Below, one piece after another: positions 18,025-24,497 of a stretch of DNA of 64,000 nt. The translations under genes were made by a program, and so were the position numbers. Location of the stretch: IMG/VR virus record IMGVR_UViG_3300017971_000185, positions 124,001-188,000 of that record. The stretch is one strand, 5' to 3'. Below the pieces are notes generated by a model. The model worked only from the letters and a program-made list of their open reading frames with translations. It was not told where the DNA came from and did no database searches. How positions within the stretch are numbered: the stretch's first letter is position 1; every line of letters begins with the position of its first letter.

Positions 18025-19722
18025 ATGCCACGAAAGCTCGGACGTAAGGAATTTCCCTCTGCCCACAGCGCCGACGACTTCACCTACCAGGGTCGTCCCG
18101 CGAAGGACCAGGACGACTTCGGCAGCGACGTTGGGCTCGCTGACATGAAGTGCGTCAACCAGTTTGGCAGCAACAACAACAAGTACTACCACGCTGGAGT
18201 GGTGAAGGCGTCGGACGGTTCGTGGTGGGTCTACTTGGAGTGGGGTCGCGTCAAGTCAGGCAAGTCATGGAACGGAGGGTTCACGGGACAGGACTTCCAG
18301 TTTTGGGCGTGTACGTCGGAGAGCGAAGCTCGCGAGGCTTTCGAGAAGCAGTGCCGCAGCAAGAACATCAAGCGGCTGGAGCAGAAGGACGGCATCTGGG
18401 TTGGTCGGAAGGGCAAGGATGGTTACGTCGTCCAGAAACTCGCCACTCGTGAGAACGGGCTGCCCGATGCCTACACGATCAAGGATGCAAGCGGCGTTTC
18501 TGGCGAGAAGAAAGCCGCCAAGAAGAAGGCCACCAAGAAGACCGCGAAAGCGAGACCAACGCAGAGCTACCATCCGCAGGAAGTCAAGCTCGTACAGGAT
18601 CTCGTTGGCGGTACTCAGACATACGTGCAGCGAGCCGTCACCGAATCCGGTGGCGTGACTCCGACGCTCGATGCCATCGAGGAGGTTCGGGATACGCTCA
18701 TTCCGAAGGCGATGAAGCACATCGCTCGCGTGTCCAAGAACACGCCGCAGGGCGCGATGGCTCAGGCAGCCTACGATCACAGGCTGGCCGTTGCTTGCAC
18801 GAAGGACAAGAAGCTACAGGAGCTTTCCAACTACGTGGCGTCTTTGGTACCGCGACCAGACCCAGGGCGGTCGGCGGACGCAGAAACGCGAGCACTGGCT
18901 ACGGTGTTGTCGTCGGGCAACATTCTCACTCTACAGCAGGATCTCGATACGTTCGTGTCTGCGCTGGAGAATGAGGATTTCGACGTGGCCGATCAGAGGC
19001 AAGTCGTGGGCGTCGATGTGGACGCTCGCCTGAATGCGCAGGTTCGTTGGCTCGATCCCAAGGGCAAGATGGGCAAGTGGGTCGAGGCTACCTTCTGTGC
19101 GATGAGCAACAATCGCCACAGCCATCTGCGTGGGCGGCTGGTGATCAAGAACATCTTTTCGGTGGTACGGCCAGACCGCGATGCCAAGTTTGTGGCCGCG
19201 GTCAAGAAGGTGGCGAAGGCACGGAAGGGCAACTTCAGTCACTTCGCGCGCATGCAGCCGAGGCGGCGGCAAGACCTGTCGGATCTCTCAGATTTGGCGG
19301 CGCAAGCCAATGTGTTTTTGGGCATCCATGGAACGCGCGCAGTCAACGTGGCTCCCATCGTCCAGACTGACTTGCGGTTGCCTCGATCACTGCCGGGTGC
19401 TCTGCTCACGGGAGCGGCTTTCGGCCACGGGATCTACGAAGCGACGGACTGGCGCAAGAGCCATGGCTACACGGGCCACTCTTCCTCCTATTGGGCGAGC
19501 GGCGGCACGATTCGAGGCCGGGGATGGTTCATGTTCCTTCAGGACGTGATCATGGGGCAGGCGTACATGTGTCGCTCGACGGGTTCGTGGTCCACGCCGC
19601 CGAACAAGTGCGACTCGGTTGCGGCCTATCCCGAGTTTTCCAGTGTCGTCAACGATGAGCACATCGTGTTCGATCCCCACTATCAGAGGATCAGGTACAT
19701 CATCGAGGGCGACATCAAGTGA
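18025..19722 (+). CDS. PARP1/2/3-like ADP-ribosyltransferase: WGR domain, helical regulatory-like domain, ART catalytic domain
   Basis: WGR: NNNKYY...VYLEWGRV. Catalytic: LGIHGT (His 19327), TGAAFGHGIY (Tyr 19435), NDEHIVFD..Q.RIRYII (Glu 19657). These match the PARP1 HGS / TGYMFGKGIY / NEYIVYD...LKYLL pattern. Confidence 0.9.
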   Translation: MPRKLGRKEFPSAHSADDFTYQGRPAKDQDDFGSDVGLADMKCVNQFGSNNNKYYHAGVVKASDGSWWVYLEWGRVKSGKSWNGGFTGQDFQFWACTSESEAREAFEKQCRSKNIKRLEQKDGIWVGRKGKDGYVVQKLATRENGLPDAYTIKDASGVSGEKKAAKKKATKKTAKARPTQSYHPQEVKLVQDLVGGTQTYVQRAVTESGGVTPTLDAIEEVRDTLIPKAMKHIARVSKNTPQGAMAQAAYDHRLAVACTKDKKLQELSNYVASLVPRPDPGRSADAETRALATVLSSGNILTLQQDLDTFVSALENEDFDVADQRQVVGVDVDARLNAQVRWLDPKGKMGKWVEATFCAMSNNRHSHLRGRLVIKNIFSVVRPDRDAKFVAAVKKVAKARKGNFSHFARMQPRRRQDLSDLSDLAAQANVFLGIHGTRAVNVAPIVQTDLRLPRSLPGALLTGAAFGHGIYEATDWRKSHGYTGHSSSYWASGGTIRGRGWFMFLQDVIMGQAYMCRSTGSWSTPPNKCDSVAAYPEFSSVVNDEHIVFDPHYQRIRYIIEGDIK

Positions 19723-21277: not shown

Positions 21278-21348
21278 AAGGTTTGATTTTTGGCGTATTA
21301 TCCTCACAGACAACAACCAACTTGGGCCACGATCCAAGGAGAAAGAAA

Positions 21349-22158
21349 ATGACAAACGCAACCTCCACGAAGGAAGCAGTCAAGGACAGCGGAAACTGGC
21401 GCGATGCAGTGGTCGATATCGTCGGCTACTACACGTCCAACAACTTGTGCTTTTCGTCAGGCGAGATCGCCGCGGAGTTGAGAACGCATCGGACGGATCT
21501 CAGGTTTTCGGTCCTCAATCTGGGCGAGTACGTGCGCGACCTGTTCTACAACGGTGCGATCAACTACACCGACGATGACGGCGACAGTCAGCAGGCTGTC
21601 CAGGCATCAAGGACAACCTCGGGAACCGGCCGCACTCCGGCTGGGAGGCTCGTATTCGTGTACGGCCCAGAGGCGGCCGAAGCGAACGCTCACGACTTCG
21701 AGGTTGACATTCCCAATCCTGGGGCTCCGGCAACCGCTGCCGCCAGCCCGATCAAGCCGAAGGGCGGCTACCCGACCGCTGTCGATGGCGACGATGATGA
21801 GGATGACGACGGCACGGCCATGACGGCCAGCGACAAGCTGGGGTCAGGCGAGTTTCAGGCGACGGTGCATGTGGACAAGCGCCTGTGCATCACACGGCCG
21901 ATCTTCGACAAATTCATTCAGGCGTCGGGCAAGACGCTTCGTGGCGGCGACTCGGTGTACATCGTGCTGAGCGACGATGAAGCTCGTATCACTATCGATG
22001 ACCCGAACGATGATGACGCTGTGACCTACGATCTCAGCAAGGAGAGGGGTCGGGTGCTGTTCCGCCGCAAGAGCAATGAGTTTGCTCCCGGCGATCACTA
22101 CAAGGTCACAGTGGCGGCAGCGGCTTTGGTCGTTGATCTCAGCGCTCCGCTCGACTAG
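21349..22158 (+). CDS. Putative transcription regulator: N-terminal HTH-like region plus C-terminal tandem AbrB/MraZ-like swapped hairpins
   Basis: AAGGAG RBS; FSSGEIAAEL helix; VHVDKRLCITRPIF...LRGGDSVYIV and ERGRVLF...FAPGDHYKVTV resemble AbrB repeats. Confidence 0.45.
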   Translation: MTNATSTKEAVKDSGNWRDAVVDIVGYYTSNNLCFSSGEIAAELRTHRTDLRFSVLNLGEYVRDLFYNGAINYTDDDGDSQQAVQASRTTSGTGRTPAGRLVFVYGPEAAEANAHDFEVDIPNPGAPATAAASPIKPKGGYPTAVDGDDDEDDDGTAMTASDKLGSGEFQATVHVDKRLCITRPIFDKFIQASGKTLRGGDSVYIVLSDDEARITIDDPNDDDAVTYDLSKERGRVLFRRKSNEFAPGDHYKVTVAAAALVVDLSAPLD

Positions 22159-22200
22159 GCTGTCACGAAGGACCAGCGGGCGGTGTCCCTGGCAATGGAA

Positions 22201-22318
22201 CACCTGACAAGCCGAACAACACCCGCAGCCGCGCCACGTGAAACGGGAGTCCTCGGCCCCTTGCCTTCCAGGGGGATTCCAGCGAGCCCGAGGAAGCGGG
22301 GGCGCGGGCTTTCAGGTG
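22201..22318 (+). ncRNA. Candidate structured non-coding RNA
   Basis: Nested stems: CACCTGA-C-AAGCC/GGCTT-TCAGGTG, CGCGCC/GGCGCG, TCCTCGG/CCGAGGA, CCCCT/AGGGG, plus crossing CCCGC/GCGGG, in a 193-nt intergenic gap. Confidence 0.45.
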
Positions 22319-22346
22319 TAAACTCCTCGGCTGATTTCGCGTAGAG
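22318..22346 (+). promoter_or_regulatory. ECF-sigma-like phage promoter
   Basis: GTAAAC-N15-GCGTAGAG, 5 nt before ATG 22352. Confidence 0.8.
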
Positions 22347-22351
22347 AGGTC

Positions 22352-22606
22352 ATGGGCAAACTATCTCCCATAGACCAAGCAACACAGCAGGAACGTCTGC
22401 GGTGTGCGGCTCAGATCTGCGAAGGCTGTCGTCAGCACGGCAAGCCGTTCTGGCGTGAAGGAGACGGCGGAGACAAGTACGCGCAACACCCACCCTACGA
22501 GGTATTCGTGTACGGGGATACGGGCTACCAAGTAACTTGTCTTGCTGAGAGGATCTGGGAGGTAGAGCTAGAGGAGGGAGAGAACGATGGCAGTCCTCAG
22601 TCGTGA
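22352..22606 (+). CDS. Hypothetical protein (CxxC..CxxH)
   Basis: 84 aa directly after the promoter motif. Confidence 0.6.
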   Translation: MGKLSPIDQATQQERLRCAAQICEGCRQHGKPFWREGDGGDKYAQHPPYEVFVYGDTGYQVTCLAERIWEVELEEGENDGSPQS

Positions 22607-22894
22607 CAAGGCGCGTAAGGCAAGGGCACGAAAGCACGCGAAGCGTGTGTGGTGTTGACTCTCATGGATGAAGACCAACTGGTGGTGATCGATGAGAAGC
22701 CGTTTGTTGTCACCAAGAACGAAGACGGCGATGACATCGCGATTCCGGTGGACGACAACTACGCTCTTGTTCGCATTCGTGAGGCAGAGAGCAACGCTGA
22801 AATTGCCAAGACAAAACGAACCAAACACCGAGCAGACGCTCTGGTGTGGGTTGTGTTCTTTGCTGGTCTTTTCTCGTGGTGCGTACTGACGTGA
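22587..22894 (+). pseudogene. Small C-terminally anchored membrane protein, frameshifted at about 22619
   Basis: Strong RBS plus ATG 22587 reads MAVLSRDKARK. Adding one G at 22619-22620 joins it to GKGTKAREACVVLTLMDEDQ... (track ORF 22649..22894). Confidence 0.45.
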
Positions 22895-22922
22895 AGAATC
22901 CAGCCGCGGGTAGAGTAGCAGT

Positions 22923-24497
22923 GTGCGGCACGCTGCTCCCGTTCGTGTAGAACAGAGACGCGACAATCTCGTCAAGGGGGCGCTTCATCTCGCTCGCGCA
23001 GTGAAGGTCGCCTATGGCCCTCGCGGCGGCACGGTTCTGATCGCACGTCGGTCGCCGCACGATATCCTGACGACCCGCGATGGCATGACGATTGCCTGTG
23101 AAGTCATCCCTCCGCATCGGGTTGAGCGTCTCGGAGCTTCCGCTCTCCGACAAGCTGCGATTCGCGTCAACGAGGAAGTGGGGGACGGGACGAGCACGGC
23201 GATTCTGATCGCCGCCAGGCTCATCGAGATCGGACACAAGCACATTACGGCTGGGCACGATGCTGCCCTTTTCGTCCAGTCTCTTCGCCGCATGGCTTCT
23301 TGCACGCGTTCTCTCGATGCCTTGAAGATCGAAGTCACGGACAAGAAGATGCTGGAGCATCTGGCGCTGCACACGACGCGAGGCGACAAAGAGATCGCCT
23401 GGGCATTGGCTGAGGCTTCCATGCTCGTTGGGAAGACGGGGATGGTCGTGGTGGAGGATGGAAAGGGCGTCGAGGTAGAGATCGTTCCCAAGCAAGGGAT
23501 GGAGCTAGACAAGGGCTGGGAGTCGTCTGACTTCTCCTCGGACGGACCATGGCAACAAGACGTGTGCCTCGTAGCCGTGGTCAATGGGACGGTGACGGAG
23601 TTTGGTGACATCGCTCCCATGATGGAGGCTGCTTCCCAGGTCGGTCCCGGCAACCTGCCTCTACTCGTCATCAGCCGCGGCATCTACGGTGAGGCGCTTC
23701 AAACGATGGTCACGAACCATCGCAAGGATGTGCTCCACTGCTGCGCAGTGCGATGCCCAGGGTACGGCCCGAAGCAACGGGCCTGGATGGACGACTTGGC
23801 TGCGCTGACCCAGGCGACGGTGGTCGAGCCGAAGATGAACATGAGGCTCAAGGACTTCGACTCCGGCTGGCTTGGCTCCGTTCAACAGGTGACGGCTACT
23901 GCCGACGACGCAACGCTCGTGTGTTTTGATGACGCCTACGAAAGCATCGAAAACCGAGTCAACGTTTTGCGCGGGGAACGTGAACGTTCGGAGTCGGCCC
24001 ACGATCGCGAAAAGCTCACCGAACGTATCGCCAAACTCACGGATGGCTTCTGTCTGCTCCGGGTCGGAGGGGTCACGGAAGCTGCGGCGAAGGAGCGTCG
24101 AGGCCGCATCGAGGACGCGCTTCACGCGGTGCGGGCAGCGCTCACAAGTGGGGTCGTGCCGGGTGCGGGAATGGCGTATTTGTGGCTAGCGGAGAAGGTG
24201 AAGGAAGGCAGCCCAGGTCTGGCCGCTCAGGCGCTCTACGAGGCTCTCAGAGAGCCTGTGAGGGCGTTGGCGCATAACACGGGGGGCGAACCCTCGGTGA
24301 TTCTCCAGGGGCTCCAGGCGGCCCAGAAGCCCTGGTACGGATGGGATGCACAGACGCGCAAATACCGCGATTTGGCAGCCGAACCTGCATTGGTCGATCC
24401 TCTCGGGCTCGTGCGGGTGGTGGTGGAAGCGGCCGTGTCCGTGGCGTCAACTCTCTTGACGGCAGACGTGGCAATCACGAAGGTTGGTGACCCATGA
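22923..24497 (+). CDS. groEL: Phage-encoded GroEL-like chaperonin
   Basis: VKVAYGPRGGTVLI, LTTRDG, VGDGTSTA, ERIAKLTDG..LRVGGVTE...ER..RIEDAL.A.RAAL..GVVPG.G, LVDP..V...A.SVA..LLT. No GGM tail. Confidence 0.95.
   Translation: MRHAAPVRVEQRRDNLVKGALHLARAVKVAYGPRGGTVLIARRSPHDILTTRDGMTIACEVIPPHRVERLGASALRQAAIRVNEEVGDGTSTAILIAARLIEIGHKHITAGHDAALFVQSLRRMASCTRSLDALKIEVTDKKMLEHLALHTTRGDKEIAWALAEASMLVGKTGMVVVEDGKGVEVEIVPKQGMELDKGWESSDFSSDGPWQQDVCLVAVVNGTVTEFGDIAPMMEAASQVGPGNLPLLVISRGIYGEALQTMVTNHRKDVLHCCAVRCPGYGPKQRAWMDDLAALTQATVVEPKMNMRLKDFDSGWLGSVQQVTATADDATLVCFDDAYESIENRVNVLRGERERSESAHDREKLTERIAKLTDGFCLLRVGGVTEAAAKERRGRIEDALHAVRAALTSGVVPGAGMAYLWLAEKVKEGSPGLAAQALYEALREPVRALAHNTGGEPSVILQGLQAAQKPWYGWDAQTRKYRDLAAEPALVDPLGLVRVVVEAAVSVASTLLTADVAITKVGDP

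What the first reader, a model, noticed from the sequence alone, without database searches (positions are those of the whole stretch)
22160..22318. Candidate novel structured RNA with a possible pseudoknot or switch
Seen: in one of the few long intergenic gaps the sequence folds into nested stems: 22201-22213/22307-22318 (12 bp, one bulge), 22230-22235/22301-22306, 22250-22256/22288-22294 and 22257-22261/22270-22274. A crossing helix 22222-22226/22296-22300 and an alternative hairpin 22182-22204 compete with these. There is no U-tract, so it is not a simple terminator. I do not recognise it as tRNA, SRP, 6S, RNase P or hammerhead. The outer stem ends on the first base of the next promoter's -35 element.
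Basis: partly seen in the sequence, partly recalled or inferred. Interest (0 to 1): 0.6.

Follow-up and report, generated by a model that had tools for sequence, protein, structure and literature searches.

The report
Widespread phage pseudoknot RNA, unnamed family
The flagged gap holds a real structured RNA with a pseudoknot, one copy of a family found in well over a hundred unrelated phage contigs and absent from Rfam 15; its function is still unknown.

Summary
The window is part of a 497-kb uncultivated megaphage. Folding energy is no better than shuffles, and the 13-bp outer stem is absent from the two sister lineages.

H1 is 22170-22173/22185-22188 with the loop CAGCGGGCGGU.

- **H1 stem:** it covaries strongly across 81 distinct sequences (97% of cells paired against 80% shuffled, 0 of 500 shuffles as high).
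- **Pseudoknot:** loop GCGGG (22176-22180) pairs with CCCGC (22222-22226). Natural loop variants always carry the compensating change (G-C 65, A-U 14, U-A 2).
- **P2:**
- **Membership:** a model built without the window scores it at 41.8 bits (E 1.5e-9), one copy per genome.

No Rfam 15 family matches. Members lie between co-oriented genes, often replication or recombination genes. I infer a cis-acting element at gene boundaries; a riboswitch or a ribozyme is not excluded.

The parts
21343..22158 (+). Upstream gene: conserved hypothetical protein of about 271 aa, no Pfam or PHROG family. Its stop codon TAG is at 22156-22158. The RNA element is very probably co-transcribed with it.
   Evidence: ORF list. 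79 homologues of about 270 aa cover 92% of the 291-aa ORF, so the true start is near 21343. No family found.
22170..22188 (+). Hairpin H1. Stem 22170-22173 with 22185-22188 (GGAC/GUCC). The 11-nt loop 22174-22184 (CAGCGGGCGGU) is invariant or nearly so across the family.
   Evidence: Sequence. Family stem pairs 2 and 3 are 99-100% paired with all four Watson-Crick types, against 0.53 when shuffled. Formal count. A-U in the window becomes G-C in L009/L029 and G-U in L031.
22176..22180 (+). Pseudoknot 5' strand (GCGGG) inside the H1 loop. It pairs with 22222-22226.
   Evidence: Natural variants of the last G always carry the matching change in the partner: G-C 65, A-U 14, U-A 2, no exceptions.
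22189..22218 (+). Linker (loop 3 of the pseudoknot). At 30 nt it is long; most members have 5-20 nt, some with an inserted hairpin have more. Its 3' end is A-rich (GAACA). It holds the 5' strand (22201-22213) of the window-specific outer helix.
   Evidence: Linker lengths across the family. The outer helix is not kept in L009/L029.
22219..22228 (+). Motif ACACCCGCAG, invariant in all collected members except the covarying position. It includes the pseudoknot 3' strand CCCGC (22222-22226).
22229..22307 (+). P2 domain. The closing stem 22229-22235 with 22301-22307 (CCGCGCC/GGCGCGG) starts directly after the invariant CAG, as in the family. The 65-nt interior is large for the family.
   Evidence: 77% of members have a perfect complement of at least 5 nt downstream of the anchored 5' strand, against 20% in the swap control; 59 distinct heptamers. 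Invariant in the window, L009 and L029.
22250..22294 (+). Inner hairpin of P2: 22250-56 with 22288-94, then 22257-63 with 22269-75. It has a pyrimidine-rich apical loop and a 12-nt bulge on the 3' side. An alternative register exists.
   Evidence: Folds. In three lineages the changes and indels fall in the loop and the bulge, with one G-U change and one C-G to U-A change. Not statistically testable with three sequences.
22307..22318 (+). 3' strand of the window-specific outer helix. It overlaps the upstream edge of the promoter-like motif.
   Evidence: Absent in L009/L029.
22318..22347 (+). Copy of the genome's repeated promoter-like motif (GTAAAC, 16 nt, CGTAGAGAGG), directly before the next start codon.
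   Evidence: About 30 copies before genes, against 12 loose matches in a reversed-sequence control.
22352..22606 (+). Downstream gene: 84-aa Cys-rich hypothetical protein. It is replaced by other genes in L009 and L029.

Best explanation
SHOWN. Window 22170-22307 (+ strand) is one copy of a widespread phage RNA family that Rfam 15 does not hold. Its core is an H-type pseudoknot.
- Hairpin H1 has a variable, covarying stem and an invariant 11-nt loop.
- Five loop bases (GCGGG) pair with CCCGC, which lies after a linker that ends A-rich.
- A stem of variable sequence (P2) follows at once. It closes a variable insert whose apical loops are pyrimidine-rich.
- The element lies on the sense strand, just after the stop codon of the upstream gene, so it is transcribed as an intercistronic or 3'-UTR part of that mRNA.

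INFERRED (about 0.35-0.4 for this mechanism). It acts in cis on its own transcript at a gene boundary. The rigid pseudoknot plus hairpin is read by something common to many hosts, such as RNA polymerase, a ribonuclease or the ribosome. That sets whether the transcript ends, is cut or stabilised there, and so how far the upstream replication or early genes are coupled to what follows. In this megaphage the next gene has its own promoter. Here the element would mainly mark and protect the 3' end of the upstream message.
For: Structure:
- H1 and pseudoknot counted on 81 distinct sequences: 97.2% of cells paired against 80.3% shuffled; covariation score 0.360 against 0.097; 0 of 500 shuffles as high; slid controls 39-55% paired.
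- Pseudoknot pair G-C 65, A-U 14, U-A 2. The variants were fetched with a pattern that left the partner free.
- P2: 77% against 20% in the control.
- G-U pairs fit the + strand only.

Membership: model R2, built without the window, hits 22167-22230 at 41.8 bits, E 1.5e-9, and L009/L029 at 50.7 bits. There is a single copy in the 497-kb genome.

Selection: in the three megaphage lineages the core has exact runs of 43 and 25 nt, while four-fold sites of the flanking genes are only 59-82% identical. Indels are not multiples of three.

Context:
- All real flanking genes are co-oriented with the motif.
- H1 often starts 0-12 nt after the stop codon.
- 78% of members have a Shine-Dalgarno site and a start codon within 120 nt after P2. 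29% have a hairpin followed by a U-run.
- Some copies end operons, before a convergent gene or a strong terminator.
- Relatives that lack the element have a plain hairpin or terminator at the same spot.
Against: - There are no expression data. None of the runs that hold this DNA is RNA.
- The window copy has no U-tract and lacks the UGA bulge, the CCG and the 3' hairpin that many family members have.
- Folding energy is not better than shuffles.
- Most pseudoknot columns were fixed by my search patterns, so only one of its five pairs could be tested.
- No partner protein is shared across the loci: at most 26 of 92 share any one protein. The factor that reads the RNA is therefore a guess.
- About 20 invariant bases are more than a protective hairpin needs, which favours a ligand pocket or a catalytic core.
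Confidence: 0.7

Rival explanations
1. Riboswitch-type sensor. The invariant pseudoknot is an aptamer for a small molecule or ion. P2 and the 3' hairpin form the expression platform that controls the downstream gene.
For: The core is a compact H-type pseudoknot with about 20 invariant bases, variable stems and a linker that ends A-rich. In 29% of members a hairpin plus U-run follows, and in 78% a Shine-Dalgarno site and start codon follow closely. A few lineages have an upstream CUGCGG that could compete for CCCGCAG.
Against: Downstream genes are very diverse (67 clusters among 89) and not metabolic. Several copies sit at operon ends or, as in the window, before an independent promoter. No known riboswitch model matches.
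Confidence: 0.17
2. Self-cleaving ribozyme that cuts polycistronic phage transcripts at gene boundaries.
For: The topology (a hairpin whose loop pairs with a downstream segment, then a second hairpin) recalls pistol ribozymes (from my own knowledge). The core is invariant and there is no consistent gene association. The element is common in phages and co-oriented with the genes.
Against: No ribozyme model in Rfam matches, even at E up to 10. No cleavage site can be inferred, and nothing here tests catalysis.
Confidence: 0.13
3. Trans-acting small RNA derived from a 3' UTR. Its conserved loop or its pyrimidine-rich loop pairs with a host or phage RNA.
For: It lies right after stop codons, and some copies end with an intrinsic terminator. 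The apical loops look like anti-Shine-Dalgarno sequences. The H1 loop has a 9-nt exact complement to 16S rRNA 1397-1405.
Against: Loop variants are compensated within the molecule, so the loop's partner is internal; about 20% of the aligned set (16 of 81) lose the rRNA match. Most members lack a terminator. The rRNA match has a 2% chance level and was noticed after the fact.
Confidence: 0.08
4. Nothing special: an ordinary GC-rich terminator or stabiliser hairpin cluster, or a DNA-level element (operator, origin, recombination site), or a chance fold.
For: Relatives carry simple hairpins at the same site. Energy is not better than shuffles. All stems in the window are Watson-Crick, so they are also inverted repeats in DNA.
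Against: Family-wide covariation, including G-U pairs and a pseudoknot. Strict co-orientation with the genes. Conservation well above that of synonymous sites.
Confidence: 0.04

Closest known systems
H-type pseudoknot riboswitch aptamers (preQ1-I, SAM-II, fluoride, guanidine-III)
   Same: A small hairpin whose loop pairs with a segment just downstream. The third loop ends A-rich. The core bases are invariant while the stems vary. A hairpin, terminator or ribosome-binding site often follows.
   Different: No Rfam model matches. The neighbouring genes are replication, recombination or unknown phage genes, not a metabolic pathway. Many copies lie after a gene rather than in a promoter-proximal leader. 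No ligand is known.
Pistol self-cleaving ribozyme
   Same: A hairpin loop forms a pseudoknot of 5-6 bp with a downstream strand next to a second hairpin. It is found mostly in metagenomic and phage DNA without a fixed gene partner (from my own knowledge).
   Different: No sequence or model match. Here the pseudoknot 3' strand precedes P2 instead of lying in an internal loop. Cleavage is untested.
Phage T4 gene 32 mRNA pseudoknot (translational operator)
   Same: A phage H-type pseudoknot on a replication-gene message. One family member (L046) lies next to a single-strand DNA-binding protein gene.
   Different: The T4 element lies 5' of its gene and works with an adjacent unstructured tract bound by gp32. 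This family lies after many different genes and has its own invariant sequence.
HK022 put antiterminator RNA
   Same: A cis-acting RNA in phage early operons that needs no phage protein. The family also occurs in early operons of temperate Pseudomonas phages.
   Different: put is two stem-loops without a pseudoknot and is known from about ten sequences (PMC9378689). There is no sequence likeness.
Intrinsic terminators and 3' stabiliser hairpins
   Same: Same position after the upstream gene as the terminators of relatives. P2 is a GC-rich hairpin.
   Different: The window has no U-tract. An invariant pseudoknot core is not needed for termination.

Membership tests
Unnamed phage pseudoknot RNA family (CAGCGGGCGGU loop) | Hairpin H1 with a variable stem of 3-7 bp and the 11-nt loop CAGCGGGCGGU | tested here: met
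   Window 22170-22188, GGAC/GUCC plus the exact loop. Model R2, built without the window, gives 41.8 bits, E 1.5e-9.
Unnamed phage pseudoknot RNA family (CAGCGGGCGGU loop) | Downstream ACACCCGCAG whose CCCGC pairs with the loop GCGGG (pseudoknot) | tested here: met
   Window 22219-22228, exact motif. The pairing is shown at family level by G-C, A-U and U-A covariation.
Unnamed phage pseudoknot RNA family (CAGCGGGCGGU loop) | Stem P2 of variable sequence starting right after the invariant CAG | tested here: met
   22229-35 with 22301-07, 7 bp. Family test.
Unnamed phage pseudoknot RNA family (CAGCGGGCGGU loop) | Sense orientation between co-oriented phage genes | tested here: met
Unnamed phage pseudoknot RNA family (CAGCGGGCGGU loop) | Features of the long subclass: UGA bulge before the P2 3' strand, CCG after it, then a small 3' hairpin and U-run | tested here: not met
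   The window has AGCGGG before and GCUUUC after P2. It belongs to the short subclass with the GGAC/GUCC stem (L038-L049).
Any Rfam 15 family (including riboswitches, ribozymes, C4, 6S, SRP, RNase P) | Covariance-model score at or near the gathering threshold | tested here: not met
   No hit in the window, in 14 family loci, or at E up to 10 on two members.
tRNA / tmRNA | ARAGORN detection | tested here: not met
Intrinsic (Rho-independent) terminator | GC-rich hairpin directly followed by a U-tract | tested here: not met
   No U-tract after P2 in the window, L009 or L029.
Riboswitch (as a functional class) | Specific ligand binding that changes the expression platform | not testable with these tools
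   Needs in-line probing and reporters.
Self-cleaving ribozyme (as a functional class) | Site-specific self-scission | not testable with these tools
   Needs an in-vitro cleavage assay.

The most novel reading that the evidence does not exclude
The family is a new class of functional RNA, either a riboswitch or a self-cleaving ribozyme. Its roughly 20 invariant bases would form the ligand pocket or the active site. Many unrelated phages would use it inside early and replication operons.
Probability: 0.3. Interest if true: 0.85.

Novelty: new variant of a known kind. Interest (0 to 1): 0.66.

Why it matters
Phage genomes are still poorly charted for functional RNA. It spans very different phages, from a 497-kb megaphage and phages with family-A DNA polymerase to temperate Pseudomonas aeruginosa phages such as PMG1. 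It is unannotated in deposited genomes and missing from Rfam 15.

An invariant core across such different phages and hosts implies that it binds something shared, or is itself catalytic. Cultivable carriers exist, so the function can be tested directly. Adding the family to annotation pipelines would also explain many 'long intergenic gaps' in phage replication modules.

Tried and rejected
- **Energy test.** Not significant. Kept only as a caveat.
- **Repeat within the genome.** BLAST and two covariance models find a single copy. Weak BLAST hits to 22157-22186 were coding-region noise.
- **Protein-coding.** Indels of 10, 4, 3, 1 and 7 nt among the lineages break every frame. The frame behind the TAG stays open for 62 codons in the window but is not kept, so stop-codon read-through is rejected.
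- **Origin in a bacterial chromosome.** The genome contigs pattern scan gave only chance hits in coding regions.
- **First metagenome scan with core anchors.** It found only the same phage, because I had anchored on the lineage-specific insert.
- **Pairing of the H1 loop with 16S rRNA 1397-1405.** The complement is real at 9 nt, but the chance level is 2% and natural loop variants are compensated within the molecule. Disfavoured.
- **put-like antiterminator.** Different architecture.
- **Shared partner protein.** None found.
- **Upstream CUGCGG as a universal competing strand.** It occurs in only 3-4 lineages.
- **RNA expression.** No RNA run holds the stretch.
- **Literature.** Sequence strings and keyword searches found no description. 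The IMG/VR catalogue of candidate structured RNAs (PMC10690425) may hold it under an anonymous number, but its tables are not available here.
- **Search of kin genomes.** The tool does not draw relatives for a virus record.

Full report
**Setting.**
The window is G000:C1:124001-188000 of a 497-kb IMG/VR virus record with 57.7% G+C. Nearly all genes in it lie on the + strand. The flagged gap (22159-22351) lies between two genes. Upstream is a conserved hypothetical gene of about 271 aa, with its stop codon at 22156-22158. Downstream is an 84-aa Cys-rich gene that starts at 22352. Nearby genes encode a protein with PARP catalytic and WGR domains, a GroEL-like chaperonin and an SNF2 helicase.

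**Checking the observation.**
There is no U-tract, and no Rfam, tRNA or tmRNA match.

Folding energy is not better than dinucleotide shuffles. The whole gap has z = +0.54. The chosen 128 nt have z = -1.65 on the + strand and -1.51 on the - strand.

The sequence from 22318 on is one of about 30 copies of a promoter-like motif (GTAAAC, 16 nt, CGTAGAG), each shortly before a start codon.

**Close relatives.**
Identical copies of the locus occur in other assemblies of the same phage. Homologues of the upstream protein gave a graded series.
- Two sister lineages, L009 and L029 (94% amino-acid identity in the upstream gene), keep the element.
- Their core, 22218-22307, has exact runs of 43 and 25 nt, while four-fold degenerate sites of the flanking genes are only 59-82% identical.
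- The differences fall in one hairpin loop, which also changes in length, in a 3' bulge and in the flanks.
- Indel lengths exclude a coding frame.
- The 13-bp outer stem is not kept, because L009 and L029 lack ten bases of its 5' strand. In the window it is only mildly unusual (56 of 2000 shuffled flank pairs bind as well).
- With three sequences, covariation cannot be judged (156-170 of 500 shuffles do as well).
- Relatives with 79% identity or less have a plain hairpin or a canonical terminator at this spot.

**The turning point.**
Laying contigs of public runs showed fragments that share 22168-22259, or 22169-88 plus 22284-306, in other sequence contexts. Twelve further contigs matched, all unrelated to the megaphage. 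All had the same order of parts: a variable hairpin, the H1 hairpin with loop CAGCGGGCGGU, a short linker, AACAACACCCGCAG, and then a GC-rich hairpin of different sequence in each.

**Evidence for structure.**
- *H1.* Its stem is anchored by the invariant loop, so the alignment is unambiguous. Pairs 2 and 3 are 99-100% paired with all four Watson-Crick types, against 0.53 after shuffling.
- *P2.* It starts right after the invariant CAG. A perfect complement of at least 5 nt lies downstream in 77% of members, against 20% when the 5' strand of another member is used. There are 59 different heptamers.
- *Pseudoknot.* I spent the last viral scan on a pattern that demanded a non-G at the last G of the loop's GCGGG and left two partner positions free. 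Every genuine hit with A had U at the first C of CCCGC (18 distinct sequences). Every hit with U had A (3 distinct sequences). Hits with C were coding-region noise without H1.
- *Formal count.* On an 81-sequence alignment 97.2% of cells pair against 80.3% shuffled. The covariation score is 0.360 against 0.097, with 0 of 500 shuffles as high. Slid controls pair at 39-55%. The pseudoknot pair is G-C 65, A-U 14, U-A 2.
- *Caveat.* The other four pseudoknot pairs were fixed by my search patterns and say nothing either way.
- *Strand.* G-U pairs occur on the + strand and would be mismatches on the other strand.

**Membership of the window copy.**
A covariance model built from those 81 sequences, without the window or its sisters, finds window 22167-22230 at 41.8 bits (E 1.5e-9) and L009/L029 at 50.7 bits. 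It finds nothing in the relatives that lack the element, and only this one copy in the 497-kb genome.

In window coordinates:
- H1 is 22170-73 with 22185-88.
- The pseudoknot is 22176-80 with 22222-26.
- P2 is 22229-35 with 22301-07.

The window copy is unusual in its long linker (30 nt) and its large P2 insert. It also lacks the UGA bulge, the CCG and the 3' hairpin seen in the larger subclass. Its nearest look-alike is L046, a 24-kb contig from one of the metagenomes that also hold this phage, which has almost the same P2 base.

**Context and likely function.**
- Real genes near the motif are always on its strand.
- The commonest upstream gene is a family-A DNA polymerase (26 loci). Others are a DNA methyltransferase, a primase-helicase, a single-strand DNA-binding protein, Mu Gam, DUF968, an HNH nuclease and a portal protein. 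Downstream genes include an exonuclease and a DNA polymerase but are otherwise very diverse.
- In temperate Pseudomonas aeruginosa phages (PMG1, YMC11/02/R656, PACT201 and others) the element lies unannotated in the early region. In PMG1 a DNA methyltransferase lies upstream and an exonuclease downstream.
- H1 often begins 0-12 nt after the stop codon, which leaves no room for a promoter. The RNA is therefore part of the upstream message.
- After P2, 78% of members have a Shine-Dalgarno site and a start codon within 120 nt (median 36 nt), and 29% have a hairpin with a U-run.
- Some copies precede a convergent gene or a strong terminator.
- In the window and its sisters an independent promoter motif follows.
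- No protein is shared by more than 26 of 92 loci.

From this I infer a cis-acting element at gene boundaries that is read by a host component or a ligand. For the window copy I favour a role at the 3' end of the upstream message. This step is inference. A riboswitch, a ribozyme or a 3'-UTR-derived small RNA remain open.

**Comparison with what is known.**
No Rfam 15 model matches the window, 14 family loci, or two members searched at E up to 10. ARAGORN finds nothing. Sequence-string and keyword searches of the paper library found no description. The put RNA of HK022 has a different architecture. A catalogue of 10,006 candidate structured RNAs from IMG/VR may include the motif under an anonymous number, but I could not check this.

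In architecture it is closest to H-type pseudoknot aptamers and, in topology, to pistol ribozymes. It is a member of neither.

**A lead that weakened.**
The H1 loop has a 9-nt exact complement to E. coli 16S rRNA 1397-1405. Shuffled 12-mers do as well in 2% of trials. I noticed the match after the fact, and the natural loop variants are compensated inside the RNA. Pairing with rRNA is therefore unlikely to be the constraint.

**Verdict.**
It is a single-copy member of a large, apparently undescribed phage RNA family with a covariation-supported pseudoknot. Its function is open and can be tested in cultivable Pseudomonas phages.

Noticed in passing
window 22318-22347, also 16751, 32497, 36069, 45421, 52219 (CGCGTAGA sites); about 30 sites genome-wide: Repeated promoter-like motif GTAAACTTCT...GAATCNCGCGTAGAGAGG. 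Its AAC, 16 nt, CGT spacing recalls promoters of ECF-type sigma factors (from my own knowledge). It lies 10-30 nt before start codons, and some genes would be nearly leaderless. Short GC hairpins with U or A runs often lie just upstream.
   Followed up: partly
window 22352-22922 compared with L009:3990-5090 and L029:3990-4890: The genes between the RNA element and the chaperonin differ among three very close megaphage lineages. Homology breaks right after the promoter motif, which looks like cassette exchange at promoter copies.
   Followed up: partly
window 18025-19722: A 565-aa protein with a PARP catalytic domain (E 5.7e-10) and a weak WGR domain. It is syntenic in all relatives fetched.
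   Followed up: no
window 22923-24497: Phage-encoded GroEL-like chaperonin (Cpn60_TCP1, E 4.5e-48), about 32% identical to chaperonins of Vibrio, Flavobacterium and other phages.
   Followed up: no
L009:3991-4236: An open frame of about 80 aa, not called in the source record, starts right after the promoter motif. The apparent 418-nt gap in that relative is therefore mostly coding.
   Followed up: no
window 22174-22184 compared with L164 (E. coli rrsH) 1397-1405: The invariant H1 loop is exactly complementary over 9 nt to the universally conserved 1400 region of 16S rRNA. This is probably coincidence, because loop variants are compensated within the RNA.
   Followed up: yes
family loci, e.g. 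L040, L041, L065, L079, L081; window 22262-22269: The apical loops inside P2 are pyrimidine-rich (CUUCC, CCUUUC) across the family, which resembles an anti-Shine-Dalgarno sequence. The meaning is unknown.
   Followed up: no
family loci L094, L110, L122, L138, L060 and others: In the larger subclass P2 is followed by CCG, 3-4 nt and a small hairpin with the loop ACGNNAC. The CCG could extend the pseudoknot by pairing with CGG of the H1 loop. This cannot be tested because both are invariant.
   Followed up: partly
L013:3405-3445, L016:3800-3830, L025:~900-945: The plain hairpins that replace the element in more distant relatives share the loop sequence (C/U)CAGGCUC while their stems differ. They form a small covarying terminator family of their own.
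   Followed up: no
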